Shown here piece by piece: positions 5,851-52,019 of a stretch of DNA of 53,922 bases. The notes below the pieces were generated by a model that made no database searches, had not been told where the DNA came from, and saw nothing but the letters and a program-made list of their open reading frames with translations. Origin of the DNA: Macrostomum lignano. Taxonomy: Eukaryota. Numbering within the stretch: position 1 is the first letter of the stretch; each line of letters starts with the position of its first letter. The stretch covers positions 1 to 53,922 of the forward strand of contig NIVC01004233.1 in assembly GCA_002269645.1 (NCBI GenBank), written 5' to 3'. The position numbers and the translations under genes are program-made.

Positions 5851-5851
5851 G

Positions 5852-8529
5852 CTGGGTTTTTTTTTTGCCAGAGATAAGGTGCGAAATCGCACCTTGTGCC
5901 AAATTTCAAGGTGCGATTTTAAGGCTCAGAGTGCAATTTCTCCTGAGTCTTGTTTAGAATGTGAGGGTTTCACGAGAGATATTCAGACAGACATTCGAAA
6001 CGATCGTCTGTAACTTTAAACAAAATTGACCCGCTTCAACCATCTTTTTGGCAAATACTTACGCAAGTGTTGGGCGTCAATAAGCTTTAATTTATTAACT
6101 GAAGTAAAAATCCTTCTGACATACATTGATTTAAAAATTGCTTAGCAACACTAGCTCTGATTAGAAATCGCTTTACTGTTGACTAAAATTGTTTTGATCG
6201 TAGCAGCCTAAAAGCAGATACTGGATTTAAAAATGCTTCGATTTACTCTATACGCATGTCTCAGCTTTAAAATGACACCTCAGGCGTCGCAAAAGACAGC
6301 TTTGATGCTGAGATATTCGACACTAAACATGCATTGCTTTGCGCAGTCTCACATTCAGAAATTTCACTGATTTTTTGTCGATATTTGTGCAGCTGCCGTG
6401 TCCTTGTTTTTCATTAGAAACTTGTCAAATTCTAGTCATGTCCAGTTTAAACCTGGACTTCTCTTAAACTGTCTTAAGTATTTGATTTTTAATGATTCCT
6501 GCCTTTATATTGCATAGATTGTACCTGAGTCAGTGAGTCTGTGAGTGTACATTTGTACATATGGCAACCAATCATGACTTTTTCACCGCTTTGCGGTTCA
6601 AATAAATATACGAGTGTACAAGAAACATGTTCCAACTGTTATTGAGAGAAATTGACGTCGCGTTTATTAATAGTCAGTGGCAATTAATATGAAGCAAATA
6701 GTTTATTGTTATGTTTTTACTTTTTTGCGTGGCAATTCTGCTATCCAAATCGGAATGAGGTAAGCGGTGGGAATAAAATAAAAAGGAAGAATTTTTTCTA
6801 CTATTGTTGCAACCCAATAGCTATATGTACTTCAAACTTTTTAGATTGAACAGGCGATTTCTAATGTACTGCTAAGCTTTCCAATCCCTACGGACTACAG
6901 TAGCAGTTTTTAACTTTTTTTCTGTCTTGACTTCTAGACTCGGAATTCGGAACAACCTAAGGAGCCGCATGAAAATATTTAATTGGATAAAGATATTTTC
7001 TAAAAACAGCTCAAGTCGTGACACATCTTCTTCTCACCTCAGTTAATCAACTGCTGCTCCTTCTCAGACCAAAGCGATCGTGAAAGTAAAACAGATCAGT
7101 TTAGATCCCATGGCCATGAATACAACCATTTCAATTGTGAACCTGCTTCGCTTACAAGTACGAGCACTAGCCTTCCATTTGATGCCATTAGCTCACTTAA
7201 CTCTGAAATAGTTCAAGGACGGTTCCAAATGTTGAGATCTGACGTAGTAGAAGCAGTCCAATTTGTGGAAATTTATCAACTGGACTCCATGAATCACTCC
7301 AATGAAAGGCGGCGAATAGCTGTAGAATGCGTAAACAAGTTTAAGTGAGTCACAAAAACCCCATTTACTGTAACTACATACACTTGTACGTTAGCAAGGC
7401 TCCATGCGATGGTTAATAAATGGAGAAGTAGACAAGCATCTGAACAAATATTGAATAAAAATCAGTGAAGTTTCCGAATGTGAGTTTGAGCAAAGCAATG
7501 TTTAGTGTTGAATATCTCAGCATCAAAAAAGCTGTCTTTTGCAATGCCTGAGGTGTCATTTTAAAGCTGAGACATGCGTATAGAGTAAATCGAAGCATTT
7601 TTAAATCCAGTATCTGCTTTTAGGCTGCTACGATCAAAACAATTTTAGTCAACAGTAAAGCGATTTCTAATCAGAGCTAGTGTTGCTAAGCAATTTTTAA
7701 ATCAATGTATGTCAGAAGGATTTTTACTTCAGTTAATAAATTAAAGCTTATTTGACGCCCAACACTTGCGTAAGTATTTGCCAAAAAGATGGTTGAAGCG
7801 GGTCAATTTTGTTTGAAGTTACAGACAATCATTTTGAATGTCTGTCTGAATGGGTCTCCCTAAAACACGCCCCGCACCGCCCTGCAGCGCTACACATTAA
7901 AACAAATTGGACTATAATTAAAGACACTTCAGAATGCGTTTTCTGTTAAGCTTCAAGTTTTTATTAAATTTAGTTTTTTTTACTTTGAAATATAAAATTC
8001 GGTGAACAATAAGTGATATTAATAATAATATTAATAAAATAATAATATTATAATTTAATAATGAAAACGAGAATATAAAAAATAATAATATTTAAAAAAA
8101 TAAATAAAGATATTTATTCCATTACTATTTTAACTTTTCCTTGCAATCAAATACTGCATTGACAAAAAATGTTATAATGTGTAGCAGTTCGGGGCCCGGT
8201 GCGGGGCGTGTTTTAGGGAGCCTTTGTCTGAATATCTCTCGTGAAACCCTCACATTGCTCACATTTCAGACAACTGGGAATGTATATTTTAATATCTTAC
8301 ATAAGGCTATAGCTATAGGCTATATCGTCTATATGACTTAATAGGATTTAAAGAGTTATTTTGTTTCATATTTTAAGGCAATGCATAAAAAATAGCTTAA
8401 GCATGGTTAAGCCTTTAAAGAAAAATGGTTATAAGACCGCACCTAAACCGCACCTACTTTTTTAATTTCAGGGTGCGATTTTAAAATTTAGGGTGCATAC
8501 GCACACTCTGCGCACAAAAAAAAACCCTG
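5852..8529. mobile_element. Non-autonomous hAT-type DNA transposon, 2678 bp
   Basis: Termini CTGGGTTTTTTTTT and AAAAAAAAACCCTG (TIR with 1 mismatch); perfect 8-bp TSD GCCACCAG at 5844-5851 and 8530-8537; subterminal GGTGCGA/CGCACC repeats at both ends; degenerate satellite continues on both flanks. Confidence 0.82.
5981..7851. repeat. Long inverted repeat (arms about 5981-6396 and 7436-7851) inside the hAT element
   Basis: The two arms of about 415 bp read as reverse complements, near-identical in the outer portion (e.g. GACCCGCTTCAACCATCTTTTTGGC vs GCCAAAAAGATGGTTGAAGCGGGTC). Confidence 0.92.
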
Positions 8530-9479: not shown

Positions 9480-10163
9480 TTAATACAAAAATGAGTACAA
9501 GATCCGAATACGGGAGTAGGCAGAGCCAGTTTCGCTCAGGTTTCTCAGATTACCGAAGAAGGCCGCTTTGTCGCTATCGTTGACCAGCCGAACAACGAGG
9601 GGCCTTGGTCGATTGCTGAGAGGTTGTTCGCGACCGATCCGCCTGGTGGCGACAATTGGGACAGTTGCGGGGGACACTTTGAGCCCATCCTGCATAAAGT
9701 CCTCGAGCTTAGCGTCTTCTTGGAGTCCAAAAACTATGATGTTATTCTTCTTTATACCGCGCTGCCTGACTTCCTCCACGATTTCATCAAAGCTGATGTC
9801 GTAGGTGACAGTTTGCTTCCCGCTCTCAATCGACTCTAGCTCTTCTATGCGTTCTTCGAGGGCCGTCAGCTTGACTTTGAGGTCTTTAAGCAGCTCCACG
9901 CTGTTAAGTAGCGCGCGGGCATGGGTCTTGCAATCTCGGCAAGTCCATATGAGACCATTATCGCTAGGGCCATTTGCGATGGCGGTGAAAATTGGCTTTG
10001 CTAGGCCGGAGCAGGACTGGTGGCACCAGCGGTGACAGCTTTCGCATTGAATGCCTTCGTGCACTTCGTCGTTGCAGGCTAGGCAGCTGCCATCAACAGT
10101 CTCTCGCCTTGATAAGCAAAAACGTCTGTTCAAATTTGTGCCATATTGGGCCTTTGTGCGCAT
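9480..10163 (-). mobile_element. LINE (CR1/L2-type) ORF1-like protein: PHD finger, coiled coil, RRM-like domain; no ORF2 follows
   Basis: C4HC3 pattern CLAC...CESC..WCHQSC...WTCRDC; heptad-rich region LKDLKVKLTALEERIEELE; KKNNIIVFGL and RRIG...RPRPLVVRL motifs typical of LINE ORF1. The ORF runs into AT-rich non-coding sequence. Confidence 0.8.
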
Positions 10164-25800: not shown

Positions 25801-28730
25801 TCAAGTGACCCTTTATCCGGCCAAGACTGCTCTGCCGCACGGATTCAAATCGCTTAATCTGTACACAATCGATAGGGATAACCGGCTGCTGCAGGTTAGT
25901 TTGAGTCAGGTGACTTGGTGTCATTGTTTGATTTGATTGATTGATTGAGTCGATTGATTGATTGATTGATCGACTAATTTTTGATTGATTGATTGATTGA
26001 TTTAGGTCTCCCAGTGTCATTGATTAATTGATTGATCGATCGATCGAGTCAGGTCTCTCAGTGTCATTGGTTGAATTGATTGATTAATTGATTGATTGAT
26101 TGATCGAGTCAGATCTCCCAGCGTCATTAATTGATTGATTGATTGATCGAGTCAGGTCTCCCAGCGTCATTGGTTGATTGATTGATTGATCGAGTCAGGT
26201 CTCTCAGCGTCATTGATTGATTGATTGATTGATTGATCGAGTCAGGTCTCTCAGTGTCATTGGTTGATTGATTGATTGATCGAGTCAGGTCTCTCAGCGT
26301 CATTGATTGATTGATTGATTGATTGATCGAGTCAGGTCTCTCAGTGTCATTGGTTGATTGATTGATTGATTGATCGAGTCAGGTCTCTCAGCGTCATTGA
26401 TTGATTGATTGATTGATTGATCGAGTCAGGTCTCTCAGTGTCATTGGTTGATTTGATTGATTGATTGATTGATCGAGTCAGGTCTCTCAGTGTCATTGGT
26501 TGATTTGATTGATTGATTGATTGATTGCTTGATCGAGTCAGGTCTCTCAGTGTCATTGGTTGATTGATTGATTGATTGAGTCAGATCTCCCACTGTCCTT
26601 GAAGTTTTAAGAGTATTTAAAGTCATTTTAGCTAGATCCTACAAACTGTGTTGATAAGTGCTACTGAAAGTAGGTCAGAGTTCACAAAATCTCTGATGAT
26701 TGAATCGCGCAGGGCTATCGCCTCCGCCTGACGGAGCAGCAGCAGCAGATGTCGGCGATATCAACTTGGCGGCTGGCTCTGCACGAGCCAATTCTGGTCA
26801 CGGCGGCCAGACGACCAACCGAGCAGGTGCACTCAGTCGGCCGCGTGCTTGGCAATCGTCACGTGTTGTACAAATATTTGAATCCGAATTTGCTGGCCGT
26901 TGCCACTCTGGCTAAGGATATGGTGACTCCGGCGCCACAGATCGGAGACGCTTACACTCAGGTAGTCTTTGTTGGGCTTCGGCGTTGCCGAGAGTATGTG
27001 TGGGAGACATGAGGGTCGTGGTAGATATGAAGATCATGTGACAGATAGAAGGTCATGTGGTAGATACGAGGGTCATGTGGTAGATAGGAGGGTCATGTGG
27101 TAGATAGGAGGGTTATGCGGTAGATAGGAGGGTCATGTGGTAGATATGAAGATCATGTGACAGATAGAAGGTCATGTAGTAGATAGGAGGGTCATGTGGT
27201 AGATAGGAGGGTCATGTGGTAGATAGAGTGTCATGTGGTAGATAGGAGGATCATGTGGTAGATAGGAGGGTCATTTGGTAGATAGGAGGGTCATGTGGTA
27301 GATAGGAGAGTCATGTGGTAGATAGGAGGGACATGTGGTAGATATGAGGGTCATGTGGTGGATAAGAGATTCATGTGGTAGATAGGAGGGTCATTTGGTA
27401 AATAGGAGGGTCATGTGGTAGATAGGAGGGTTATGTGGTACATAGGAGGGTCATTCAGTTTACAGGAGGGTCATTGAGTAGGCAATTTCATTCATTACGT
27501 GACAACCAACTCATCCCATTCGGGCAGATCACCATCTGGCTGATAGACACCGTTTCTGGCCGCGTTGTGGCCTCGGCGACTCACCATCACAGCTCAGGAC
27601 CTGTAAGCCTTGTACACAGCGAGCACTGGCTTGTGTACTCCTTATGGAATCAGAAGCAGCGCCGGTTTCAACTGTCCGTCTGGGAGCTGTTCGCTGGTAA
27701 CGGCTTGCGCGATTGTATGAACGCTACGCAGCCTATTGTTGGCAAGCAGTCCTACATCCTGCCGGCTCCTGTGCAGCATCTGGCTGTTAGCCAAACTGAG
27801 AGAGGCATCACGGCTAAATCTGTGCTATTGGCATTGCGTTCTGGTGGTATTATGGAGCTTAGTAAAGTAAGTGCAGGGAGGTGGCTGCAAGGAGTGAGGT
27901 GGGTGCAAGGAGTGAGGTGGGTGCTGGGAGTAAGGTGGGTGCTTGGAGTGAGGTGGGTGCTGGGAGTAAGGTGGGTGCTTGGAGTGAGGTGGGTGCAGGA
28001 AGTGAGGTGGGCGCAGGGAGGGAGGTGGGTGCAAGGAGGGAGGTGGGTGCAGGGAAGGAGGTGGGTGCAGGGAGGGAGGTGGGTGCAGGGAGGGAGGTGG
28101 GTGCAGGGAGGGAGGTGGGTGCAGGGAGGGAGGTGGGTGCAGGGAGGGAGGTGGGTGCAGGGAGGGAGGTGGGTGCAGGGAGGGAGGTGGGTGCAGGGAG
28201 GGAGGTGGGTGCAGGGAGGGAGGTGGGTGCAGGGAGGGAGGTGGGTGCAGGGAGGGAGGTGGGTGCAGGGAGGGAGGTGGGTGCAGGGAGGGAGGTGCAA
28301 GGAGTGAGGTGGCTAGAGGGAGAGAGGTAAGAAAGCTTCATCCTTAATTTCTTCTTCCCTTCATCTCGTCAAGGCATTCCTGGACCCTCGCCGTCCGTTC
28401 GACATGACGCCGGAGTTCCAGGAGGAGGGCCTAATGCCGTACCACCCGGAGGTGCCGATGTCCACCCAGGCCATAGTGAACTACAACCAGAGCCTGCACC
28501 GGGTTGAGGGCATGGTGACTGTGCCAACAGGCCTGGAGTCCACCAGCCTGCTGTTTGTGCACGGCACGGACCTGTTCTGCACTCGGGTGCAACCGTCGAA
28601 AATGTTCGACGTGTTGAAAGCAGATTTTGATTACGCTTTTATTGCCGCTGTCACTATTGGCATGATCATCGGGTCCTTTGTGACTCAGCGCCTGGCCGCC
28701 AGGAAGGCCCTGTTCCGGCTCTGGTCCTGA
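10718..28730 (+). CDS. EMC1: ER membrane protein complex subunit 1, 12 coding exons (10718-10827, 17561-17787, 18039-18141, 19224-19367, 19517-19672, 20809-20899, 20988-21491, 24348-24735, 25530-25894, 26713-26961, 27528-27866, 28374-28730), 1010 aa
   Basis: Joined exons total 3033 nt, are in frame, and every intron is GT-AG with matching phase. Recognisable EMC1 motifs in order: YEDEIGKHDW, RLFVATDHNVLAAI, WMREESLA, RDEFNLHKLLV, QRTTAHFP, VHSVGRVLGNRHVLYKYLNPNLLAV, GPVSLVHSEHWLVY, TERGITAK, LDPRRP, NYNQ, GLESTSL, PSKMFDVLKADFDY, then a C-terminal TM helix. Confidence 0.96.
11515..11972. mobile_element. MITE, probably hAT-like, 458 bp, in EMC1 intron 1
   Basis: TIR CCATAGTCCGGA / TCCGGACTATGG; 8-bp TSD TAGACATG / TAGGCATG (7 of 8 match); several GGCGTA subterminal motifs. 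Confidence 0.75.
12660..13520 (-). pseudogene. Degenerate mariner (Tc1/mariner) transposase
   Basis: Across frames: LGDEAPSLTMVHKWF (HTH), MRKVSMHWVPYHL (WVPHEL-like), WVYFYNPETKEQSQQW, GILLHHNA (HDNA-like), PHPVYSLDLVPFDFFLF (YSPDL-like); several stops and frameshifts. Confidence 0.88.
14076..14262. repeat. Local direct duplication of about 80 bp (period 107)
   Basis: TTTTCAAGCTC.ATGACTTTTAGTATAAGGTGCCTATTTAATTAGGCTTTAACTCAGAGT occurs twice. Confidence 0.85.
14770..15241 (-). pseudogene. Degenerate hAT/ZBED-like transposase fragment
   Basis: GSIGSMHCHLEPFHP (end of a BED finger), IIEFIALD..PFSMVESDSF, FYEKVK...LAVTCYLWN (resembles the SxTTDxW first catalytic motif); stops present. Confidence 0.62.
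17561..17787 (+). CDS. EMC1: EMC1 exon 2
   Basis: TRQFVGRVQHLEFDL...RLFVATDHNVLAAIGLKSSRIIWRH; acceptor ggcag|, donor |gtacag. Confidence 0.9.
17828..17935. repeat. 33-bp tandem repeat, about 3 copies, EMC1 intron 2
   Basis: Unit GAGACACTTCAAAGGACAATGGGATAGCTGGTA. Confidence 0.9.
18039..18141 (+). CDS. EMC1: EMC1 exon 3
   Basis: LFSMSNGLLRSWSTSRGILNYEI; acceptor ctgcag|, donor |gtgagt; phases 1 and 2 fit the neighbouring exons. Confidence 0.88.
18290..19045. repeat. 21-bp minisatellite, about 36 copies, EMC1 intron 3
   Basis: Unit GATCCGATAATCCCTCAGCAA. Confidence 0.95.
19224..19367 (+). CDS. EMC1: EMC1 exon 4
   Basis: GSLACHEDPDDDRSLVFASTARRLVAVAPLTGALEWAANL; acceptor aaccag| (a second in-frame CAG lies 6 nt downstream), donor |gtgagt. 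Confidence 0.8.
19517..19672 (+). CDS. EMC1: EMC1 exon 5
   Basis: SEVTSFPNPDGLTVVTFDPTAGKMRLHRFGTESGVAKRTATVKAEWLTSLQR; atccag| and |gtaaat. Confidence 0.85.
19740..20806. repeat. 26-bp minisatellite, about 41 copies, EMC1 intron 5
   Basis: Unit ACTGACAATCAAATATCCCCATTTTC, ending at the acceptor AG. Confidence 0.96.
20809..20899 (+). CDS. EMC1: EMC1 exon 6
   Basis: CAISVSTLACLDPAGSIRLLSL; acceptor ttttcaag| directly after the 26-bp array, donor |gtaaaa. Confidence 0.85.
20988..21491 (+). CDS. EMC1: EMC1 exon 7
   Basis: ...SYGYRVVMTTRD...WMREESLAGIVSVEAVDLP; ccgcag| and |gtgggc. Confidence 0.92.
21500..22438. repeat. 23-bp minisatellite, left array (about 40 copies), EMC1 intron 7
   Basis: Unit GAGAATCGCCCCTAGACTATGCT. 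Confidence 0.96.
22439..23789 (-). mobile_element. Solo LTR, 1351 bp, inserted in the intron-7 minisatellite
   Basis: TG...CA termini with imperfect IR TGAAGAG / CTCTACA; 4-bp TSD GCCC (22435-38, 23790-93); removing it restores a perfect repeat unit GAGAATC-GCCC-CTAGACTAT. Minus-strand TATAAAT near 23445 and AATAAA near 23340 suggest the orientation. Confidence 0.8.
22660..23030. repeat. 25-bp tandem repeat, about 15 copies, inside the solo LTR
   Basis: Unit CCTCGAGTGCAGAAATCAATGTATT. Confidence 0.95.
23790..24303. repeat. 23-bp minisatellite, right array (about 22 copies), EMC1 intron 7
   Basis: Unit AAGAATCGCCCCTAGGCTATCCT. Confidence 0.95.
24348..24735 (+). CDS. EMC1: EMC1 exon 8
   Basis: FAQRLSGQV...LIRDEFNLHKLLVVATKDGKLAALDSATGRSVW; taaag| and |gttggt (phase 1 fits the next exon). 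Confidence 0.88.
24785..25502. repeat. About 25-26-bp minisatellite, EMC1 intron 8
   Basis: Unit approximately ACCCTGGATAACCAAACACCCTCCAG, with alternating variants. Confidence 0.92.
25530..25894 (+). CDS. EMC1: EMC1 exon 9
   Basis: LYIQRTTAHFPLEP...FSFNPITG; ccgcag| and |gttagt. Confidence 0.92.
25905..26590. repeat. Compound repeat: about 28-bp core plus variable (GATT)n, EMC1 intron 9
   Basis: GATCGAGTCAGGTCTCTCAG(T/C)GTCATTG followed by (ATTG)n. Confidence 0.92.
26713..26961 (+). CDS. EMC1: EMC1 exon 10
   Basis: GYRLRL...VHSVGRVLGNRHVLYKYLNPNLLAVAT; gcgcag| and |gtagtc. Confidence 0.93.
27010..27450. repeat. 20-bp minisatellite, EMC1 intron 10
   Basis: Unit GGTAGATAGGAGGGTCATGT. Confidence 0.93.
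27528..27866 (+). CDS. EMC1: EMC1 exon 11
   Basis: ITIWLIDTVSGRVV...GPVSLVHSEHWLVY...QSYILP...TERGITAKSVL; gggcag| and |gtaagt. Confidence 0.93.
27870..28312. repeat. 18-bp G-rich minisatellite, EMC1 intron 11
   Basis: Unit GGGTGCAGGGAGGGAGGT. Confidence 0.95.
28374..28730 (+). CDS. EMC1: EMC1 exon 12 (terminal, TM helix)
   Basis: AFLDPRRP...NYNQSL...GLESTSL...PSKMFDVLKADFDYAFIAAVTIGMIIGSFVTQRLAARKALFRLWS-stop. Confidence 0.95.
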   Translation, partial: AFLDPRRPFDMTPEFQEEGLMPYHPEVPMSTQAIVNYNQSLHRVEGMVTVPTGLESTSLLFVHGTDLFCTRVQPSKMFDVLKADFDYAFIAAVTIGMIIGSFVTQRLAARKALFRLWS

Positions 28731-36081: not shown

Positions 36082-39335
<3,254 letters not shown>

Positions 39336-40939: not shown

Positions 40940-42070
40940 GCAGAGATGGATAGATGGAGAAAGACTAGACAGGGGAGAGAGATGGATAAAGAGAGAGACT
41001 AGACAGAGGAGAGAGATGGATAGAGAGAGACTAGACAGAGGAGAGAGATGGATAGAGAGAGACTAGACAGGAGAGAGAGATGGGTAGATAGAGAGAGACT
41101 AGACAGAGGAGAGAGATGGATAGAGAGAGACTAGACAGGGGAGAGAGATGGATAAAGAGAGACTAGACAGGGGAGAGAGGTGGATAGAGAGAGAGAGATT
41201 AGACAGAGGAGAGAGATGGATAGAGAGAGAGAGAGAGATTAGACAGGGGAGAGAGATGGATAAAGAGAGACTAGACAGGGGAGAGAGGTGGATAGAGAGA
41301 GAGAGATTAGACAGAGGAGAGAGATGGATAGAGAGAGAGAGACTAGACAGGGGAGAGAGATGGGTAGAGAGAGAGAGACTAGACAGGGGAGAGAGATGGG
41401 TAGATAGAGAGAGACTAGACAGAGGAGAGAGATGGATAGAGAGAGACTAGACAGGGGAGAGAGATGGATAAAGAGAGAGACTAGACAGAGGAGAGAGATG
41501 GATAGAGAGAGACTAGACAGAGGAGAAGAGATGGATAGAGAGAGACTAGACAGAGGAGAGAGGTGAATAGAGAGGGAGATTAGACAGGGGAGAGAGGTGG
41601 GTGGAGAGAGAGATTAGACAGGAGAGAGAGTTAGATAGATAAATAGAGAGAGACTAGACAGAGGAGAGAGGTGAATAGAGAGGGAGATTAGACAGGGGAG
41701 AGAGGTGGGTGGAGAGAGAGAGAGAGACTAGACAGAGGAGAGAGGTGAATAGAGAGGGAGACTAGACAGGGGAGAGAGGTGGGTGGAGAGAGATTAGACA
41801 GGGGAGAGAGGTGGGTAGAGAGAGATTAGACTGGGGAGAGAGGTGGGTGGAGAGAGATTAGACAGGTGAGAGAGGTGGGTAGAGAGAGATTAGACTGGGG
41901 AGAGAGGTGGGTGGAGAGAGATTAGACAGGGGAGAGAGGTGGGTAGAGAGAGATTAGACTGGGGAGAGAGGTGGGTGGAGAGAGATTAGACAGGGGAGAG
42001 AGGTGGGTAGAGAGAGATTAGACTGGGGAGAGAGGTGGGTGGAGAGAGATTAGACAGGGGAGAGAGGGTG
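40940..42070. repeat. GA-rich minisatellite of about 30 bp
   Basis: GAGAGAGACTAGACAG(G/A)GGAGAGAGATGGATA-like units. Confidence 0.92.
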
Positions 42071-43660
42071 GAACAAGAAACTGGGATTTGCCCAGAAAAA
42101 GAACATCAGAGCCTCTAGAGTCGACTTAGATAATAGATTTTGTTTTGCGATGTCGTGTGATGAATAGTTCATGTGGCAGGCACACATCTGTATGACAAAC
42201 ATTCTATTGCCCTCTCATTTACATGTACAACACCAATATAAAATCTGTAGATATAGTATTATTCTGCAAATAGATGAGGCCCGTAGAGACTCGCAATCTT
42301 TGTCCGTCTCTGAAATCTCATCACAGTCATTGCCGTCATAGCCATGGCTCACCCTGTGTGTGCCACAGTGGCGCTTCCAAAGAGCCTTCATTCCCTAGAA
42401 TTTCTCTTTAATTTTTTTTCCACTGCTGCTCCACTATATCCCCTAGGGGAGAGCATAAGAGAGCTCGAAGCACAGCCCTCCCCCAGCCTCTGGTGACAGT
42501 CGAGGGCCTCCATCCATGAGTGAGACAAATGTGCCAGTGGGATGAGAGAATGAGGAGAGCACACACGCAGAGACACAGCGGGTTGGAGAAATTTCGAGAT
42601 TCGCCTGAAACTTTGAGGTTGGGGATCTGCCTGTGGTTGGGTCAGTCAGTTTGCACTTTTTTATAGCTGATAGAATGATGAATATTTATAGAATTTATAT
42701 CTTTTCCCGGATAGGCTGTTGGAAACTACAGATTTCCGTGAAAGCTGGACTAACTTCCTATTTATAGTAGCATGAGTAAGAGCTTTTAGCCCGTGCTTTT
42801 ATAGATTGTCCAAATTTTATATTGTTGATTATTTGTTGCAGTTTGTTGTCATTGCGATTGTTGCTGTTGTTGTTGTTGTTGTTTTGTCATTGGGATTGTT
42901 GCTGTTGTTGTTGTTGTTGTTGTTGAGTGCGGAGTGCAGCCGCCTAGAGCGGGGTCCATTCGATCCACTCCAGGAGCCGCGCCACCAGGTTCCCATCGGC
43001 TAGGTCTTTCAGATCGCAAATGTTGTTCTGTCTTCGGGCGACATCGATCGCAGGGCAGTGGACCAGGTGGAATTGGTCTACCTCGAGCCCGCAAAGCCTG
43101 CACTCGGCCAGCTGAGCTTTGCCGATGCGCTTAGCGTAATAGGCCGAGGAGGGGCAGTGTCCAGCTCTCATCTGCGCAACGAGGACTTGCTCACGCCGGC
43201 TGCCGTTATGGTGCGTGATGCGTCCTTGGTAAGTCTCCTTCAGATGGCCGGTCAGGTCCGGAAGGTACTCGAGACGGCGGTAGATAAACCGCTTGGCTGC
43301 TTCGAGCGAGATGGCCACTTGGGCTTGATCCAGAAGAGCTGCGGCTTTGGCCTCGCGATCGACGAACTCGTTACCAGCCACGCCAGCATGGCCGGGAATC
43401 CACTGGATCGTGAGAACGCAACGGCCAGCTGCTTGCCGAAGAAGGGCCTTCAGGTCTTCGAGTAGCGCGTTAGTGGTGGGCCGGTCGGCTATCAGAGCTC
43501 TGACGGCCGCCTGGCTATCGGTGAGGAGGGCGGCGGTGTCAACGTCCTGCTGGATGACATCCACGACGGCATCTCGGAGCGCGCGGAGCTCGGTTTCGAA
43601 GGAGCTGCACCATCTGCCCGCTGCAGAGTGGCCGCCCTGGATGATCGTGCCCGTCTCCTG

Positions 43661-43920
43661 GGGCCTTTTCATATTGCTTGTTCTGGTTCCAGAACCAGAA
43701 CCAATTTGTGAAGTATAACTTTTTGTCTCCATAACTAGAGGGAGATACGTGCTATAACGTTTTTATTATTGAATGACAATCGCCAAGAAGAAAGTGAAAA
43801 ATTGTGCTAAGTTAGGTTGTTAAGGCAGTCAAATATTAACAGAGTTAAATAGTTATACTGCTGTTTTTCTTGGAATTCCGAACCGATTTTGGTTCTGGAA
43901 TTGGTAATATGAAAAGGCCC
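43661..43920. mobile_element. PIF/Harbinger-type MITE, 260 bp, inside the LINE RNase H
   Basis: Perfect 15-bp TIR GGGCCTTTTCATATT / AATATGAAAAGGCCC; 3-bp TSD CTG; excision restores the frame WILFDQ-ETGTIIQ. Confidence 0.9.
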
Positions 43921-46900
43921 CTGGTCAAACAGGATCCAGGCGGCGCCGCCGTTGGCGGTGCCACCCGAAGCGGAGCCGTCCGTGAAGTAGCAGGTACTGG
44001 GCAGGCGTTCTCGGAAGGTGTCGGCGATGATCGGATCGCGGGTGATCTGACTGTCGGATTTACGGAGCGGTCTCACCAGTTACGGATAGAGCCTCAGCCG
44101 GTCCGAGCCGCTGAGCGTGTCCCACGGCGGGGCTCTGACCCAGGCTTCCGGGAGACGGCTGTGTGGGAGGATCTCGTTGAGCACTGAGTGAGCTTGTTCG
44201 CGGAGGCCACGGTTGGCTTTGAGCCGGGTGGGGGTCCTGAGTTCACACCTGGACCTCCAGGGGTCCGCCTCGGACCGCCGGAGCGCCTTTTCGACGGCGA
44301 CCAGCGCTCGTCGTTTGGCCTCCAGGCTGATGGGCACACAATCGGCCTCACGGTAGATGGCCACGCTAGGAGTCGAGCTTGGTAGACCAGAGACAAGTCT
44401 CAGAGCCACTTTTTGGGCTCTGTCCAGGTCATTGAGGCGAGTCTGGGAGAGCCAGGGCATCCAGGCTGCAGCCGCATGCCAAACCACAGACTCCACCACG
44501 GCTTTATACACCGTCCTAAGCGTGGCGCGGTCCCACCCCCATTCACGATGCGACAGTGCACGCAGGACAGCACAACGACGGCGCAGTTTGGCGGCAACTT
44601 CGTCGGACTGCCGCTTGAAGAGCAGGCCGCTGTCGATCCAGACACCCAGGTAGAGCAGCTCCTGCCTGGTTGGGAGTTGCTGGCCTCGGATGCACAGGTT
44701 GAGGGTACGGTCGCGGTCCCTGCGGTCTCTCGAGAAGATCCAGCATTCAGTTTTGAGGGGATTGAGATCGATACGGAGATCTGTGGCCCAGGCGTCGATG
44801 CGATCGATGGCCAGTTGAAGGCGCTCCGCAATCTGCTGGATGTTGTTGCCCGAGGCCCAGACGCCCAGGTCGTCAGCAAAGCCGGCGTAGTTGACATCTG
44901 GGACCAGGGAGTCCGCCCAGTCATTTATGTACAGGAGGAAGAGCACCGGCGAGCACACTGCCCCCTGCGGCACCCCCTCCTTAAGCGGCCTCCATTTGCC
45001 AATCGTATCGCCCACGCGGACGGCAATCTGGCGCCCCTCCAGGAAGCTGGCAAACCAGTGCACCATGCGACCCGGGACTCCCTCATCCATGAGACGGGCA
45101 AGGAGGCGGGTACGCCAGACCCGGTCGAAGGCGCGGGAGCAGTCAAGGGTGACAGCGATCGTTTGCGAGGCGGGCGTTGTTCCCAGTGGTCTTGGATTTC
45201 CTGGACCAGACGCGCCACTTGTTCTTCGCAGCTACGCCCTCTCTGAAAACCAGCTTGCCACGGTTGCAGCGTGTTGTTGAGTTCGATCCAGTGCATGAGC
45301 CGGTCCATCACAATGCGCTCCATGATTTTAACACAGATGGAAGTGAGACTAACAGGCCGGAAGCTGCTGCAGTTGGCTGGGTCTTTGCCCTCTTTCAAAA
45401 GTGGGACGATAACCGCCTTCTTCCAGACTCCCGGGCAGTGCCCTAGGGACCAGCACCGATTAAAGACCGTGAGCCAGGCCGTGAGCCACGAGTCCGGCAG
45501 GTGTCTGAAGAAAGCCGCTTCGATGCCGTCGGGGCCGGCTTTTTTGGTGACGTCGGGGTGTGAGATGACTCGTTTGAGTTCTTCCATGGTGAGGGCGCAA
45601 TCGTACTCGGAGGTCCCCGTGGGATACTTATTCAAACGCTTCGCAGTGCTAACTTTGAAGGCGCGGTCAGCGGCGTCATGCTTGAGGGTGCTGATCTTGG
45701 CGTAGTGTCGGCCAAAAGCATTTGCTTTGTCGCGATCCGAGCTGCACTCCTTTCCGTCCGCCACTAGGATTTCGTTCTTCGCGGTCGGTTGCTCTCCAGC
45801 ACTTAGGGTTTTAATGGTACGCCACATTTTTTTGATGTCAGAGGAACTAGACAGGTCCTGCACAAATTCCTGCCAGAAGGCGGCTTTTTTCTCCGCGCAG
45901 GCCCTGTTGAGCTCGGCATTCTTGCGCTTCCACTCGTCCGGGTCACCGCCACGGGATCTGAGTCTGTTTCTTTCGTCCCGAAGACTAGAGAGCTCCGAAT
46001 CCCAGTAGGGCTTGTTTTTGGAGGAGACGCGCTTCATGGGAATGCAAGCTTTGGCCGCCTTACTCATACGAAAGCAGAGGCGTTGGATTTGCTGCTTGAC
46101 AGTGCCGTTGTTGAGCTCATTGCTATCGTCTTCGAGCTGGGCCTGGTAGCTGTTCCAGTCAGCTTTCTGCCAGGCCCAGGCGAGACAAATCTTCTGGTCG
46201 GTGCTAGCGCGGTCGCCATCCACAGTGATGAGAATGGGTTTGTGGGCAGAGCCCAGTTCGTCAAGGGCCTCCACGAGCAGAGGTCGTCGAGGCCAAGCGC
46301 TAGCGAGGCTGATGTCGGGGGCACTCTCTCCACCGTCGCGGCGATCGAGACAGGTTGAGGGAGCCCGAGTTGAGGACACAATACCCATTACTGTCACACC
46401 ACTCCAGCAGGGCTTTGGCTTGTTCGGCGCCCTCGGCCCCTGGCCAGGCAGACTACCCCAGGTCGTGTGATGGATATTAAAGTCGCCAGCAATAATCTCG
46501 CACTGGTGCGGCTTCAGCCAGAGATCGATGTCCGGGTGCTCCCGGCAGTCGGCGCCAGCACTGCGCCTGATGGGCGGCCGGTAGATGTTAGTGAGCACGA
46601 GACGCTGTTTGGCGCTAAGGTTGATCACGATGCGGCAGCCTTTCACCGTGCCCCCACTCCAGCCTTTGAGCCGCCGGAAGGGGGTTTCTTGGCGGATGAA
46701 CGTGAGGAGGCCTCCTCCCTTGTACATCTCGCTGGAACGTAGCGTTCGTCGGTCTTTTCTCACGGTGGTAAAGCCGGGGATCTTTGGCGTGCGGGAGACG
46801 GGGTCAAGCTTAGATTCTTGGATCATGACAACATCAACTTTGAGGCGTTGAACCAGCTCCTCCAGTTCTCCCATTTTGTTTCGGATGCCGTCCGCATTCC

Positions 46901-46949
46901 ATTGCAGGACCTTGAGGCCCTTGTTATTGGCAGGTCCTTCTTTCCGTCC

Positions 46950-47500
46950 GCGGTGCATTTCGTTGTGGGCCGAGAATGCGGGCGTCGAGGACGCGGCGAT
47001 CGCGGCGGATGGCGGCGCGGGCCGAGCTAATGCTGATAGGCACGTGCACGATAGGATTGTTGCTGTTGTGCGCTTGCGCGAGAGTGGCGGCTTCGGCGGC
47101 CGCAAGGCCCGCGGCGGTGTTGCCATCGATGCCGGCGTGCCCGGGGACCCAGCAGAAAAGAAAATCAGTGCGGCCGGAGGAGCCGGCGATGAGCTGCCAG
47201 CAGGTCGCACCGGTAGCGGTAGACTGGCGGGCGGGCCCCTGCTCCAGGGCGGTCAGAGCGCTGAGGCTGTCAGTGAGAACCGCCATGCTGCGGGGCAGGG
47301 CCGGGCCCTCACGGAGGCAGTAGGACAGGGCGGTCTGGATCGTGACAAGTTCGGCCTGGAAGCTGCTGCACAGAGCACCGGCCGCGGCGCGGACGGTGAC
47401 CGCGGGGCGACCGTCCCTGAACTCGATGACGGCGGCGCCGCCCCCGTTGCTGGTACCCTCCTCAGCGGAGCCGTCCGTCCAGGCGATGACGGAGCACTCG
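46950..47500 (-). pseudogene. Second, divergent RNase H domain directly upstream of the APE domain
   Basis: IAWTDGSAEEGTSNGG...SSFQAEL...(frameshift)AVLTDSLSAL...WVPGHAGIDGNTAAG; the last catalytic Asp is replaced by Gly. Confidence 0.85.
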
Positions 47501-47777
47501 CGGGCTCACGCAATGCCGGCCTCGGCGGCGGCTGCCCGGAATTGTTGCTGTTGTTGTTGTTGTTGTTTTGTCATTGAGATTGTTGCTGTTGTTGTTGTTG
47601 TTGTTTTGTCATTGAGATTGTTGCTGATGTTGTTGTTGTTGTTGTTGTTTAATCAATGGAATTTTTGCTGTTGTTGTTGATTTATCAATGGGGCTGTTGT
47701 TGTTTAATCAATGGAATTTTTGCTGTTGTTATTGTTGTTATTTTTTGTCATTAGGATTGTTGTTGCTGTTGTTGTTG

Positions 47778-48418
47778 TGTGTGTCCTCGGCCCCGTACCA
47801 TCAGGCAATCCACTGCGGGTGGGCCGCCCTTAGGAACCTCTTAGGAACCATGTTCTCCTTCCTGAGGTCTTCCAACTCCATCAAACCGATACGCTGACGG
47901 AGACCATCCCAACGCGCGCACTTCCACCAGTGATCTTTATCTTCCATTTCTCCGCATAGCTCGCAAACACCTTCGCCTTCCAGACCCACCTTCTGTCTCC
48001 AATACTTGGCGAGCTTACAGTGGCCCGATCAAAGCTGCGATAAGATGGTAGCCACTTTTCTGCCACAGTCGACGCGTTCGATCGCACCTCCGTACACTGA
48101 TCTCAGACGGGCGTCATTTATGCTGGGCCTCCACCGGTGCTTCAAGTGCCTGAGCAACGCCTCGTCCTCGACAGCCGTCTGCCCTTGGGGCAACTGCGCG
48201 GCCTGCTTAGCCGGCTCGTCAGCCCTCTCATTACTCTTGATGCCACAGTGGCCGGGGATCCATTGTATCGAGATGCTACACCACTCGCTCGCCTTCCTGA
48301 GTCTGCCGATCAATCTGAATTGGCTCCCGGTTCTGGTAACTCTCATTCGCAGTGGCCACGACGGCGGACTTACTGTCGGTCAAGATGATTAGGTCTCTGT
48401 TCTTCGACAAGGTCAAGC
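47778..48418 (-). mobile_element. 5'-truncated LINE of a different family (C-terminal half of RNase H, CCHC knuckle, (AAC)n tail)
   Basis: IILTDSKSA, WIPGHCGIKSNERAD, QLRSGH, CELCGEMEDKDHWWKC, stop at 47801-03, about 25-nt UTR, then the AAC tail; frameshifted. Confidence 0.88.
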
Positions 48419-48541
48419 TGTTGTTGTTGTTGATATTTGTGATATTTGTTGATACTTGATATTTGTTGTTGTTGTTGTTGTTGTTGTTTTGTCATTGGGA
48501 TTGTTGCTGCTGTTTCGTCATTGTGATTGTTGTTTTTGTTT

Positions 48542-48573
<32 letters not shown>

Positions 48574-48612
48574 GCTGTTGTTATTGTTTTGTCATTGGGA
48601 TTGTTGCTGTTT

Positions 48613-48662
<50 letters not shown>

Positions 48663-49350
48663 GCTGTTGCTGTTGTTATTGTTTTGTCATTGGGATTGTT
48701 GCTGTTGTTGTTGTTGTTGTCGTTGTTTTGTCATTGGGATTGTTCCTGTTGTTGTTGCTGTTTTGTCACTGGGATTGTTCCTGTTGTTGTTGCTGTTTTG
48801 TCACTGGATTGTTCCTGTTGTTGTTGTTGTTTTGTCACTGGGATTGTTCCTGTTGTTGTTGCTGTTTTGTCACTGGGATTGTTCCTGTTGTTGTTGTTGT
48901 TTTGTCACTGGATTGTTCCTGTTGTTGTTGCTGTTTTGTCACTGGGATTGTTCCTGTTGTTGTTGCTGTTTTGTCACTGGGATTGTTCCTGTTGTTGTTG
49001 TTGTTTTGTCACTGGGATTGTTCCTGTTGTTGTTGTTGTTTTGTCACTGGGATTGTTCCTGTTGTTGTTGTTGTTTTGTCACTGGGATTGTTCCTGTTGT
49101 TGTTGTTGTTTTGTCACTGGGATTGTTCCTGTTGTTGTTGTTGTTTTGTCACTGGGATTGTTCCTGTTGTTGTTGCTGTTTTGTCACTGGGATTGTTCCT
49201 GTTGTTGTTGTTGTTTTGTCACTGGGATTGTTCCTGTTGTTGTTGTTGTTTTGTCACTGGGATTTTTCCTGTTGTTGTTGTTGTGTTGTCACTGGGATTG
49301 TTCCTGTTGTTGTTGTTGTTTTGTCACTGGGATTTTTGCTGTTGTTGTTG
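48419..49350. repeat. (GTT)n-based minisatellite of about 33-36 bp; further remnants at 42843-42925 and 47541-47777
   Basis: Unit TTTTGTCA(C/T)TGGGATTGTT(C/G)CTGTTGTTGTTG; the same motif flanks both LINE insertions. Confidence 0.93.
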
Positions 49351-49513
49351 TTGTTGCTTTTGGCCATGGTGGTTTTTTTTACCTATTTTTACTGTTTTTG
49401 TTTTTTTGTTGTTTTTATCGGCTGTTTCCGTCAGCTTCAGAATTTGCTTTCAGTATATTTGCAATGATCTTTTCGATTTTTTAAAACATTATACTGTACA
49501 GTATCCACTGCCA

Positions 49514-49899: not shown

Positions 49900-50000
49900 G
49901 TGTCTGTCAGTCTGTCTTAGTGTCTGTCTTAGTGTCTGTTTGTCTGTCTGTCTGTCTGTGTGTCTGTCTGTGTGTCTGTCTGTCTGTCTGTCTGTCTGTG

Positions 50001-50065
<65 letters not shown>

Positions 50066-50144
50066 TTCTGTCTGTCTTAGTGTATGTCTGTCTTTCTGTC
50101 TGTCTTAGTGTCTGTCTGTCTGTCTGTCTGTCTGTCTTAGTGTA

Positions 50145-50185
<41 letters not shown>

Positions 50186-50608
50186 TTCTGTCTGTCTTAG
50201 TGTATGTCTGTCTGTCTGTCTGTCTGTCTGTCTTAGTGTATGTCTGTCTGTCTGTCTGTCTTAGTGTATGTCTGTCTGTCTGTCTGTCTTAGTGTATGTC
50301 TGTCTGTCTGTCTGTCTGTCTTAGTGTATGTCTGTCTGTCTGTCTGTCTGTCTTAGTGTATGTCTGTCTGTCTGTCTGTCTGTATGTCTTAGTGTATGTC
50401 TGTCTGTCTGTCTGTCTGTCTGTATGTCTTAGTGTATGTCTGTCTGTCTGTCTGTCTGTCTGTATGTCTTAGTGTATGTCTGTCTGTCTGTCTGTCTGTC
50501 TTAGTGGATGTCTGTATGTCTGTCTGTCTTAGTGTATGTCTGTCTGTCTGTCTGTCTGTCTGTATGTCTTAGTGTATGTCTGTCTGTCTGTCTGTCTGTC
50601 TTAGTGTA

Positions 50609-50684
<76 letters not shown>

Positions 50685-50685
50685 A
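49900..50685. repeat. (TGTC)n microsatellite with TTAGTGTATG interruptions
   Basis: Direct reading. Confidence 0.95.
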
Positions 50686-51189
50686 ATCTGTCTGGGATTT
50701 GTGAACCCCTCCTGCTTTCCTTGTCAAAGCGTTATATTTTTTAACTTTTTTTCAATTTCCTTATTCTTCCATAATCTTTTCTAATCCACCGCTAATCTCA
50801 ATCATGTTTTTCTTCTCCACTGAGGTTTCCTCATCAAGAAAGTAGCATAAGAGCGTATATTGCATCTATCAGATGAGAATATACTTCAGTCAGTTAATCA
50901 GTATTTATTTAATTCAGCAGAAATAGACACTGCTCTTATCGTTGAAAAGGCAACAAGCCTTGTGTGACCAAATTTGCTGAATTTCTGTGCGTGGGCAGCT
51001 GACCGCGCTGACGGCTGCCCTCCCCCCCCCCAGGCTCCCTGAAGAGTCACCGCATCAATTGCCAGAACCAATTCGTCTAAACTGATGTTGACTTGCCCGC
51101 CGTCTCTACGAAATTGTTAATGTGATTGGCGTTGACATTGATGAGGCTGCATTTCAGCACCGGGGTCAATTGAGGGCAATAGTTTTACT

Positions 51190-51600
51190 CTCTCGCTGAG
51201 TTGCCTCTATGGCCTCTCACTGAGTGTCTCTATGGCCTCTCACTGAGTGCCTCTATGGCCTCTCACTGAGTGCCTCTATGGCCTCTCACTGAGTGCCTCT
51301 ATGGCATCTCACTGAGTGTCTCTATGGCCTCTCACTGAGTGCCTCTACGAGCGTATGGCCTCTCACTGAGTGCCTCTATGGCCTCTCACTGAGTGCCTCT
51401 ATGGCCTCTCACTGAGTGCCTCTATGGCCTCTCACTGAGTGTCTCTATGGCCTCTCACTGAGTGCCTCTATGGCCTCTCACTGAGTGCCTCTCTGGCCTC
51501 ACATTGAGTGCCTCTCTGGCCTCTCACTGAGTGCCTCTCTGGCCTCTCACTGAGTGTCTCTATGGCATCTCACTGAGTGCCTCTCTGGCCTCTCACTGAG
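51190..51600. repeat. 23-bp minisatellite
   Basis: Unit CTCACTGAGTGCCTCTATGGCCT. Confidence 0.93.
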
Positions 51601-52019
51601 CGCCTTTCTGGCTTAACATTAAGATCTATTTTAAAATTCTGTGTGAATACAAATTTTTACCTTGCAGCTCGTATTACAAATATAGTAATTAATATATATT
51701 TTTCATTCCCTTCATACTACATTTTTTTGCTTGATTGCATTCTGAGCGATCGTGAGCGAGGTTAATGACAAATACGCTGGTAGAGCAAGCGCCAGCTTGA
51801 CTGATTGCTTTGCTAGGTGATAAATTCAGGCAAAATATTTCAAAGCTCTAGAGCGTAACTAGAGAATTGTCTACTAGTAAGCCTGAGAGTAAAAGAAGTG
51901 AGCCAGCCAGAATCCACTTTTTATCCATATCAAGGATCATCAATAATTAATTCTCTCAATCTACCAGTAGAGCCAAATATACCTTAGTTTCAATCGTTCG
52001 CGCTCCATCACCCAATTTT

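What the first reader, a model, noticed from the sequence alone, without database searches (positions are those of the whole stretch)
42926..47540. LINE with two RNase H domains: RNaseH-APE-RT-RNaseH-CCHC
A complete second RNase H (TDGS, AEL, TDS, WVPGH; last Asp changed to Gly) lies immediately 5' of the endonuclease, where ORF1 would be expected. There is no knuckle, AAC tail or satellite spacer between it and the APE, and it is a different sequence from the C-terminal RNase H. The whole unit shares a single pair of target flanks. It is either a new architecture (RNase H in place of ORF1), a template-switch chimera, or a deletion fusing two tandem elements. No 2A (NPGP) motif was seen.
Basis: partly seen in the sequence, partly recalled or inferred. 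Interest (0 to 1): 0.75.

Follow-up and report, generated by a model that had tools for sequence, protein, structure and literature searches.

The report
Two dead LINE fragments fused together
The "LINE with two RNase H domains" is real as a string of domains, but it is most likely an accidental one-off fusion of a fragment of one dead retrotransposon to a 5'-truncated copy of an unrelated one, not a new kind of element.

Summary
On the minus strand, 47537-42944 reads RNase H, APE endonuclease, RT, RNase H, CCHC, with no knuckle, tail or satellite between the first RNase H and the endonuclease.

The "new architecture" reading is not supported.
- **The 5' RNase H (47537-~46945) is foreign.** It is an internal fragment of a different LINE family, here called A. 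It is 44% identical to canonical RT-RNH-CCHC modules in databases and only 33-35% identical to the element's own RNase H. It is cut off just before the conserved CCHC region. GC is 70%, against 58-63% in the body.
- **The body (family B) is 5'-truncated.** Relatives, including the near full-length L001, carry a 2A peptide and PHD fingers before the endonuclease. These are missing here.
- **Relatives show only the canonical order.** All 34 database proteins carrying an RNH5-like domain plus APE or RT read APE-RT-RNH.
- **The copy is dead.** It has one frameshift, one in-frame stop and a MITE-like insertion. The 5' RNase H has no start codon and lacks its fourth catalytic Asp.

The most likely origin is a deletion joining two head-to-tail LINE insertions in a (CAA)n-rich satellite. 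A template switch during reverse transcription is the main rival. Whether the junction recurs could not be tested, because the source genome is not in any searchable collection. Interest is low.

The parts
47541..47800 (-). 5' flank: degenerate copies of a 35-38-bp (CAA)n-rich satellite (unit about CAACAACAACAACAACAGCAACAATCYCAATGACAAAA). It separates the composite from the upstream LINE fragment U.
   Evidence: TRF; sequence
46945..47537 (-). Fragment of LINE family A. It holds a complete RNase H domain, about 25 codons before it and about 45 codons after it. It is truncated at both ends: no RT, no CCHC, no 3' UTR, no tail. There is an in-frame TGA at 47508-47506. The fourth catalytic Asp is Gly. 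GC 70%, GC3 81%.
   Evidence: Pfam; phmmer; alignment; composition
46917..46961 (-). Junction zone. Homology to family A (reading frame 2) ends near 46945-46936. Homology to family B (frame 0) is unambiguous from 46916. An ATG at 46958-46956 opens the APE frame. The RNase H frame ends at TAA 46926-46924. There is no filler, tail or satellite.
46233..46916 (-). Family B APE-type endonuclease domain. The 2A/PHD region that precedes it in relatives is absent.
   Evidence: Pfam Exo_endo_phos and Exo_endo_phos_2; alignment A1
44635..45383 (-). Family B reverse transcriptase domain, broken by a frameshift at about 45165 (frame 0 to frame 2).
   Evidence: Pfam RVT_1 on two ORFs
44080..44082 (-). In-frame stop codon (LYP*LVR) between RT and the 3' RNase H.
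43358..43989 (-). Family B's own RNase H domain (YFTDGS ... GNEFVD), split by an insertion. With the CCHC region it is 42% identical over 261 aa to the C-terminal module of relative L001.
   Evidence: Pfam
43658..43920 (-). MITE-like AT-rich insertion inside the 3' RNase H. It has perfect 16-nt terminal inverted repeats (GGGGCCTTTTCATATT) and a CAG/CAG duplication. Removing it restores the frame (ILFDQ|ETGTI).
43055..43102 (-). C-terminal Cys-His motif of family B (CRLCGLEVDQFHLVHC).
42926..42946 (-). Stop codon TAG (42946-42944) and an 18-nt 3' UTR.
42846..42925 (-). (CAA)n run, which is the element's tail and/or the target, followed by two satellite units (the 3' flank). Relative L001 also ends in a short 3' UTR plus (CAA)4.
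47800..48416 (-). Context: a separate 5'-truncated LINE fragment (U), holding the second half of an RNase H plus CCHC, with one frameshift, a 23-nt 3' UTR and (CAA)n. It shows that LINEs sit head to tail in this satellite.

Best explanation
This is a dead composite of two unrelated LINE copies. It is not an element built with two RNase H domains.

**Proposed sequence of events**
1. A 5'-truncated copy of LINE family A (originally RNase H, CCHC, tail) sat in a (CAA)n-rich satellite.
2. A copy of family B landed head to tail just downstream. Family B's canonical order is 2A, PHD, APE, RT, RNase H, CCHC, (CAA)n tail. It probably landed by priming its (CAA)n tail on the satellite or on A's own tail.
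3. A DNA-level deletion removed A's 3' end (CCHC region, 3' UTR, tail), any spacer, and B's 5' end (5' UTR, 2A, PHD). The deletion happened either during B's integration, with the 5' end of the cDNA joined upstream inside A, or later.
4. This left A's RNase H abutting B's endonuclease.

The unit then decayed further, gaining a frameshift, a stop and a MITE-like insertion. It does nothing now.

**Shown:**
- The two parts have different origins.
- Both parts are truncated.
- The copy is dead.
- LINEs lie in tandem in this satellite.

**Inferred:**
- The order of events.
- That the fusion was a DNA deletion rather than an RT template switch.
For: **1. The 5' RNase H is foreign to the body.**
- It is 44% identical to the RT-RNH-CCHC module of P0062 (E 4e-51).
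- It is only 33-35% identical to the element's own RNase H and 34% to that of B's relative L001. The element's own RNase H-CCHC module is 42% identical to L001.
- In an NJ tree it pairs with P0062a/b, while the 3' RNase H pairs with fragment U.

**2. It is an internal fragment.** Homology to canonical modules starts about 25 aa before TDGS. It ends at DARILGPQRNAPRT, 5-10 aa before the conserved QLRAG...CxxC block that every full homologue has.

**3. There is a composition step at the junction.** GC is 70% and GC3 81% upstream, against 58-63% and 68-74% downstream.

**4. B is 5'-truncated.**
- Five relatives share an E.E(I/V)R.G.WRC..C finger about 45 aa before LQWNADG.
- P0005/L001 and P0007 have Pfam PHD domains there.
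- 14 of 60 relatives have a D(V/I)ExNPGP 2A motif directly before Cys-rich PHD-like fingers.
- None of this is present here.

**5. Relatives show the canonical order only.** All 34 of 34 proteins with an RNH5-like domain plus APE/RT read APE-RT-RNH. Proteins with several RNase H matches are tandem 5'-truncated fragments.

**6. The precondition for a deletion is visible.** Another 5'-truncated LINE (U) lies head to tail only about 260 bp of satellite upstream. U, B and L001 all end in a short 3' UTR plus (CAA)n.

**7. The locus is old enough for secondary rearrangement.** B carries a frameshift, a stop and a MITE-like insertion.

**8. The 5' part does not fit the usual template-switch chimera.** It lacks the 3' end of its parent RNA. 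In described chimeras the 5' part is a full-length RNA copy (PMC2104539).
Against: - No pre-deletion allele and no parental A or B sequence is available, so the deletion is inferred and not seen.
- No remnant of A's 3' end exists anywhere in the window.
- The flanks are compatible with a single insertion event: an apparent duplication of about 28 nt.
- The junction is clean, with no filler. It lies next to an ATG that opens the APE frame, and this ATG overlaps the end of the RNase H frame, as ORF1/ORF2 overlaps do in real LINEs.
- Uniqueness of the junction was not established, because the source genome is not in any searchable collection.
Confidence: 0.55

Rival explanations
1. Template-switch chimera made in a single retrotransposition event. 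The RT copied B RNA from its (CAA)n tail and left the template just upstream of the APE coding region. It resumed on an A-family RNA at an internal site after the RNase H, copied about 590 nt, and the cDNA was joined to the target. The result is a one-off, non-functional insertion with one pair of flanks.
For: - The two parts are joined directly, in the same orientation, with no tail or spacer.
- The 3' part is a 5'-truncated LINE with its tail.
- The flanks are compatible with a single duplication.
- LINE RTs are documented to make bipartite and tripartite chimeras and mosaic LINEs this way (PMC2104539; bioRxiv 10.1101/2025.02.02.635956).
Against: - In described chimeras the 5' part is a full-length copy of the acceptor RNA. 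Here the acceptor would have been entered about 0.45 kb upstream of its 3' end and left again before its 5' end.
- The satellite flanks cannot prove a single duplication.
- Tandem independent LINE insertions are visibly present at this locus.
Confidence: 0.27
2. A real, amplified chimeric subfamily. The A-derived RNase H piece would have replaced the 2A/PHD 5' end of B and would serve as the new 5' UTR/promoter or as an ORF1-like product. This locus would be one decayed copy of it.
For: - The RNase H frame is open for 193 codons.
- An ATG opens the APE frame 32 nt before the RNase H frame stops, like an ORF1/ORF2 overlap.
- Recurrence of the junction could not be tested.
- Chimeric LINE-derived families that propagate are known in Magnaporthe.
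Against: - There is no start codon before the catalytic core, and a TGA lies 6 codons upstream of W-TDGS.
- The fourth catalytic Asp is lost.
- The open frame is expected by chance at 70% GC. The alternative frame over the same stretch is open too.
- B lacks N-terminal modules conserved in relatives.
- 0 of 34 related proteins have RNH before APE.
- No second copy exists in the 54-kb window.
Confidence: 0.06
3. Assembly artefact: two separate LINE copies were joined wrongly in a repeat-rich region.
For: The region is dense in satellites and repeats. No read-level evidence is available.
Against: The joint is between two unrelated unique sequences, the post-RNase H region of A and the pre-APE region of B. 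It is not inside a shared repeat, which is where collapses normally occur.
Confidence: 0.04

Closest known systems
Single-ORF APE-type LINEs with an N-terminal 2A peptide and RNase H after RT (Ingi/Vingi-like organisation). 2A-bearing non-LTR clades are listed in Odon et al. 2013, PMC3708506. The nearest sequence relative is L001 (ENA ERZ27251032), P0005 plus the next ORF.
   Same: The body (family B) has APE, RT, RNase H and a C-terminal Cys-His motif, then a very short 3' UTR and a (CAA)n tail. It is 42-47% identical to P0002-P0005/L001, which have the same order and the same kind of tail.
   Different: This copy lacks the 2A and PHD-finger N-terminus of its relatives and is broken in three places. 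The clade could not be assigned, because no curated repeat library or RT phylogeny was available. That Ingi is the RNase H-bearing clade among the 2A clades is from my own knowledge.
Template-switch chimeric retroelements: U6-L1 chimeras in mammals and WEIRD/Mg-SINE-MGL chimeras in Magnaporthe (Gogvadze et al. 2007, PMC2104539).
   Same: Two retro-copied parts lie in the same orientation and are fused directly. The 3' part is a 5'-truncated LINE. The flanks are compatible with one duplication.
   Different: The 5' part here is not a full-length RNA copy but an internal piece lacking its own 3' end. The direct repeats cannot be verified in a satellite.
LINE insertion-mediated deletions and later deletions between neighbouring LINEs. 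These are described for human L1 by Gilbert et al. 2002, Symer et al. 2002 and Han et al. 2005 and 2008
   Same: A 5'-truncated LINE whose 5' junction lies in older sequence upstream, with loss of intervening target DNA. Tandem LINEs provide the substrate.
   Different: No pre-insertion or pre-deletion allele is available to show the loss. Here the older sequence is itself a LINE of another family, which creates the illusion of a domain architecture.
Retroelements with two RNase H folds: vertebrate retroviruses (tether plus RNase H) and some Ty3/gypsy lineages (Malik and Eickbush 2001; Ustyantsev et al. 2015; from my own knowledge).
   Same: Two RNase H-fold segments in one retroelement-derived stretch, one of them catalytically degenerate.
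   Different: In those elements both folds lie after RT in one polyprotein and are conserved across the family. Here the extra copy lies before the endonuclease, in another frame, comes from another family and is seen once.

Membership tests
APE-type non-LTR retrotransposon with RNase H after RT (body, family B) | APE endonuclease N-terminal of an RT domain on one strand | tested here: met
   Pfam Exo_endo_phos, Exo_endo_phos_2 and RVT_1. Best relatives reach E 5e-165.
APE-type non-LTR retrotransposon with RNase H after RT (body, family B) | RNase H domain and Cys-His motif downstream of RT | tested here: met
   Pfam RNase_H. CRLCGLEVDQFHLVHC at 43102-43055. 42% identity to the L001 C-terminal module.
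APE-type non-LTR retrotransposon with RNase H after RT (body, family B) | 3' simple-repeat tail and no LTRs | tested here: met
   An 18-nt 3' UTR followed by (CAA)n. Relative L001 has the same tail.
APE-type non-LTR retrotransposon with RNase H after RT (body, family B) | Complete 5' end (2A/PHD N-terminus as in relatives) and an intact ORF | tested here: not met
   No NPGP and no PHD-like finger before APE. Frameshift at about 45165, stop at 44082-44080 and a MITE-like insertion. This is a truncated dead copy.
APE-type non-LTR retrotransposon with RNase H after RT (body, family B) | Placement in a named clade by RT phylogeny against reference elements | not testable with these tools
   No curated repeat library was available. 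Only unnamed metagenomic relatives and one Macrostomum lignano protein were found.
LINE family with RNase H upstream of APE (the proposed new architecture) | The same RNH-APE junction in several copies at different loci | not testable with these tools
   No second copy in the window. Nothing was found in the metagenome or prokaryote collections, nor by exact ORF look-up. The source genome is not held.
LINE family with RNase H upstream of APE (the proposed new architecture) | The upstream RNase H is a self-contained coding unit: start codon, intact catalytic tetrad, natural end | tested here: not met
   A TGA lies 6 codons before W-TDGS and there is no ATG until after the second catalytic residue. 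The fourth Asp is Gly. Homology to other LINE modules is cut off mid-module.
LINE family with RNase H upstream of APE (the proposed new architecture) | Relatives of either half show the same order | tested here: not met
   0 of 34 proteins with an RNH5-like domain plus APE/RT have RNH first. B relatives have 2A/PHD there.
Template-switch chimeric retroelement (criteria i-v of PMC2104539) | The 5' part is a full-length copy of the acceptor RNA | tested here: not met
   The A part lacks RT upstream and CCHC, 3' UTR and tail downstream.
Template-switch chimeric retroelement (criteria i-v of PMC2104539) | The 3' part is a 5'-truncated LINE, and the parts are joined directly in the same orientation | tested here: met
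Template-switch chimeric retroelement (criteria i-v of PMC2104539) | The whole chimera is flanked by one pair of short direct repeats | tested here: inconclusive
   There is an apparent duplication of about 28 nt, but both flanks are the same periodic satellite.

The most novel reading that the evidence does not exclude
The RNH-APE junction may be shared by a family of mobile copies in the source genome. In that case a piece of another LINE's RNase H region, captured by template switching, would have replaced the 2A/PHD 5' end of a (CAA)n-tailed LINE. It would act as the new 5' UTR/promoter or as an ORF1-like leader. That would be a case of 5'-end replacement by inter-family recombination, caught in the act.
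Probability: 0.06. Interest if true: 0.55.

Novelty: already known. Interest (0 to 1): 0.13.

Why it matters
As it stands, it matters little. It is an example of how neighbouring or recombined dead LINE copies can mimic a new domain architecture. It also cautions that domain strings read off raw sequence need family-level checks: the homology limits of each part, its composition, and the architecture of its relatives.

Two minor points may be useful for annotating the source genome.
- The window documents a little-sampled lineage of (CAA)n-tailed LINEs that accumulate head to tail in a (CAA)n-rich satellite.
- Relatives of this lineage have the order 2A, PHD, APE, RT, RNase H, CCHC.

If the junction turned out to be shared by many copies, it would illustrate 5'-end replacement between LINE families.

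Tried and rejected
**Looking for the source genome or other copies**
- Exact look-ups of four window ORFs, plus P0062, in the assembly collection found nothing.
- A fused RNH5+APE query against metagenome contigs and prokaryote genomes gave no confirmed relative.
- A 27-nt junction string gave no match in metagenome contigs.
- The recurrence test therefore could not be run.

**Looking for the organism**
- A word-indexed protein search with RNH5 alone found a single weak hit. The exhaustive search was needed.
- A search with a host C2-domain exon gave only about 30% identical hits across many phyla, so the organism stays unidentified.
- Rfam on the whole window gave no hit.

**Looking for discriminating signals**
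- CpG observed/expected, tried as a relative age marker for A against B, showed no depletion anywhere and is uninformative.
- Satellite phase and apparent duplication cannot separate one insertion from two, because the array is periodic.
- A search of the window for the missing 3' end of A, or for a PHD/2A 5' end of B, found neither.
- The ORF at 9480-10163 has a PHD finger, but it is an ORF1-like gene of another element.
- A literature search for LINEs with an RNase H upstream of the endonuclease found no described case.

**Arguments I rejected**
- That the frame difference between RNase H and APE counts against a real element. ORF1/ORF2 overlaps in different frames are normal in LINEs.
- That the 193-codon open frame shows selection. 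At 70% GC the alternative frame is open as well.

Full report
**What is there**

The feature lies on the minus strand. Reading 5' to 3' from 47537 down to 42944, three-frame translation and Pfam give the following order:
- A complete RNase H: 47505-46927, Pfam RNase_H positions 3-140 of 141, E 6.8e-10.
- An APE endonuclease, from LKVLQWNADG at 46916.
- A reverse transcriptase split by a frameshift at about 45165.
- An in-frame stop at 44082-44080.
- A second RNase H, 43989-43358.
- A C-terminal Cys-His motif, 43102-43055.
- The stop at 42946-42944, an 18-nt 3' UTR, and a (CAA)n run that merges into a 35-38-bp (CAA)n-rich satellite.

The same satellite lies on the 5' side from 47541.

That includes the loss of the fourth catalytic Asp: GNTAAG where homologues have GNExAD. 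There is no knuckle, tail or satellite between the first RNase H and the endonuclease, and no NPGP in any frame.

**The 5' RNase H comes from another LINE family**

An exhaustive phmmer search with the 193-aa stretch found 1827 proteins at E<=0.001. The best hit is P0062 (E 4e-51), a 3511-aa gene-model artefact. It contains two 5'-truncated LINE tails, each reading RT C-terminus, RNase H, CCHC.

Identities of the 5' RNase H:

| Compared with | Identity |
|---|---|
| Second module of P0062 | 44% |
| The element's own 3' RNase H | 33-35% |
| Upstream fragment U | 26% |
| RNase H of L001 (relative of the body) | 34% |

The 3' RNase H-CCHC module is 42% identical to L001 over 261 aa. That matches the 45-47% identity seen over APE-RT. 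So the 3' RNase H belongs to the body, and the 5' one does not. A small NJ tree without bootstrap pairs the 5' RNase H with P0062a/b and the 3' one with U.

**The 5' RNase H is an internal fragment**

In the alignment with ten canonical modules, homology starts about 25 residues before TDGS. It runs through the domain and on through VPISISSARAAIRRDRRVLDARILGPQRNAPRT. It then stops 5-10 residues before the conserved QLRAG...CxxC...H...C block that follows in every full-length homologue.
- Upstream there is a TGA six codons before W-TDGS.
- There is no ATG before the second catalytic residue.
- Base composition steps at the junction: 70% GC and 81% GC3 in the fragment, 58-63% and 68-74% in the body.

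**The body is 5'-truncated**

Relatives of the APE-RT part have more sequence in front of the endonuclease, in the same ORF.
- Five share a finger, E.E(I/V)R.G.WRC..C, about 45 residues before LQWNADG.
- P0005 and P0007 have Pfam PHD domains there.
- 14 of 60 relatives have a canonical 2A motif, D(V/I)ExNPGP, directly before Cys-rich PHD-like fingers. This fits the 2A-bearing single-ORF non-LTR elements described by Odon et al. (PMC3708506).

L001 is the 5-kb contig that encodes P0005. It shows the family's full order: 2A, PHD, APE, then RT, RNase H, CCHC, then a 24-nt 3' UTR and (CAA)4.

In the window, the frame-0 reading upstream of LKVLQWNADG is simply the out-of-frame RNase H. It has none of these motifs. 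The body therefore begins at most about 15 codons before the endonuclease domain. The junction lies within 46961-46917.

**No relative has the proposed order**

I looked at the 211 proteins retrieved with either half. Of these, 34 contain an RNH5-like domain together with APE and/or RT, and all 34 read APE-RT-RNH. Proteins with several RNase H matches are strings of truncated LINE tails.

**Context**

Only about 260 bp of satellite upstream lies another LINE fragment, U (48416-47800). It is 5'-truncated inside its RNase H, is in the same orientation, and ends in a 23-nt 3' UTR plus (CAA)n. LINEs with (CAA)n tails thus accumulate head to tail in this satellite.

The body itself is old. It carries a frameshift, a stop and a 263-bp MITE-like insertion with perfect 16-nt inverted termini and a CAG duplication.

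**How the junction most likely arose**

All the evidence says the unit is a fusion of an internal piece of family A with a 5'-truncated copy of family B. Three one-off routes give this structure.
1. B integrates next to a pre-existing truncated A, and the 5' end of its cDNA is joined inside A, with loss of the intervening target.
2. A later deletion occurs between two tandem insertions.
3. The RT switches template from B RNA to A RNA within one retrotransposition event.

I favour the DNA-level routes (1 and 2 together, 0.55) for three reasons.
- The tandem substrate is visible at the locus.
- The locus is old.
- The A part lacks the 3' end of its RNA. Described template-switch chimeras carry full-length copies of the acceptor RNA (PMC2104539).

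The template switch (0.27) remains a serious rival. The joint is clean and the flanks are compatible with a single duplication. However, both flanks are periodic satellite, so any pair of breakpoints would look that way.

A real, amplified architecture gets 0.06. In its favour are an ATG at 46958 that opens the APE frame 32 nt before the RNase H frame stops, and the open 193-codon frame. At 70% GC the alternative frame is open too, so the open frame is weak evidence. The RNase H unit also has neither a start codon nor a complete catalytic set.

Misassembly gets 0.04. It is unlikely because the joint is between two unrelated unique sequences.

**What could not be done**

It could not be run, because the source genome is not in any collection available here. 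All of the following came back empty:
- Exact ORF look-ups.
- Protein-guided scans of metagenome and prokaryote contigs.
- An exact junction string.

The organism could not be identified either.

**Comparison with what is known**

- **The body.** It is an ordinary, if poorly sampled, APE-type LINE with RNase H after RT. Its relatives have an N-terminal 2A and PHD fingers. In domain content it resembles Ingi/Vingi-like single-ORF elements, but I could not assign a clade.
- **The fusion.** It belongs to well-known classes of LINE-associated rearrangement: insertion-mediated or later deletions, and template-switch chimeras.
- **Two-RNase H retroelements.** It is not comparable to retroviruses or some Ty3/gypsy elements, where both folds lie after RT in one conserved polyprotein.
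- **Literature.** Searches found no described LINE with an RNase H before the endonuclease. That absence reflects how unusual the order would be. It is not evidence that this copy is one.

**Verdict**

Novelty: already known kinds of things, namely dead LINE copies and a chimeric junction. Interest 0.13.

Noticed in passing
window 43658-43920 (minus-strand reading), inside the 3' RNase H: A 263-bp AT-rich MITE-like insertion. It has perfect 16-nt terminal inverted repeats, GGGGCCTTTTCATATT (38-nt imperfect arms), and a CAG/CAG 3-bp duplication. Removing it restores the RNase H frame. No other copy of the terminus occurs in the window.
   Followed up: partly
window about 47047-47070 (minus strand), inside the 5' RNase H fragment: A 24-bp in-frame insert (HNSNNPIV) that no homologue has. 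It contains a 16-nt exact copy of the flanking satellite motif ACAACAGCAACAATCC (3 matches in the window, 0 expected by chance). It may be a templated patch from the satellite. Unexplained.
   Followed up: partly
window 47800-48416 (minus strand): A third LINE fragment (U), 5'-truncated inside its RNase H, with CCHC, one frameshift, a 23-nt 3' UTR and (CAA)n. It lies head to tail with the composite, about 260 bp of satellite away. Its C-terminus (RAAHPQWIA*) resembles that of L001 (RSAYPEWVS*).
   Followed up: partly
window 9480-10163 (minus strand): A 227-aa ORF with a PHD-like finger, a coiled-coil-like stretch and an RRM-like block (IIVFGL ... PRPLVVRL). It looks like an ORF1 of another non-LTR element. 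No APE/RT was found next to it.
   Followed up: partly
L001 (ENA ERZ27251032, 5061 nt); proteins P0005, P0007, P0013-P0015 and others: Relatives of the body carry a canonical 2A ribosome-skipping motif, D(V/I)ExNPGP, directly before Cys-rich PHD-like fingers and the endonuclease (14 of 60 proteins; Pfam PHD checked only in P0005 and P0007). L001 is a near full-length example that also ends in (CAA)4.
   Followed up: partly
protein P0133 (1778 aa, from the representative library): A LINE-like protein with a ubiquitin C-terminal hydrolase (UCH) domain between APE and RT, followed by RNase H. It is either an unusual captured domain or a gene-model fusion.
   Followed up: no
window 36085-39332 (+) and 27435-28304 (+): Host gene pieces. 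One has C2 domains plus a PRT_C domain (MCTP-like protein). The other is an EMC1 C-terminal domain. The best database identities are only about 30%, so the host is a poorly sampled eukaryote.
   Followed up: partly
window 3001-6000: A stretch with 63% GC and a very strong GC skew (+0.59), with long open frames on the minus strand (up to 887 aa). Not examined.
   Followed up: no
window 40942-42072, 48463-49356, 49901-50694, 51190-51612: Several distinct satellites surround the LINE cluster: a GA-rich 32/108-bp array, the (CAA)n-rich 35-bp array (about 26 copies), a (GTCT)n-like array, and a 23-bp array.
   Followed up: no
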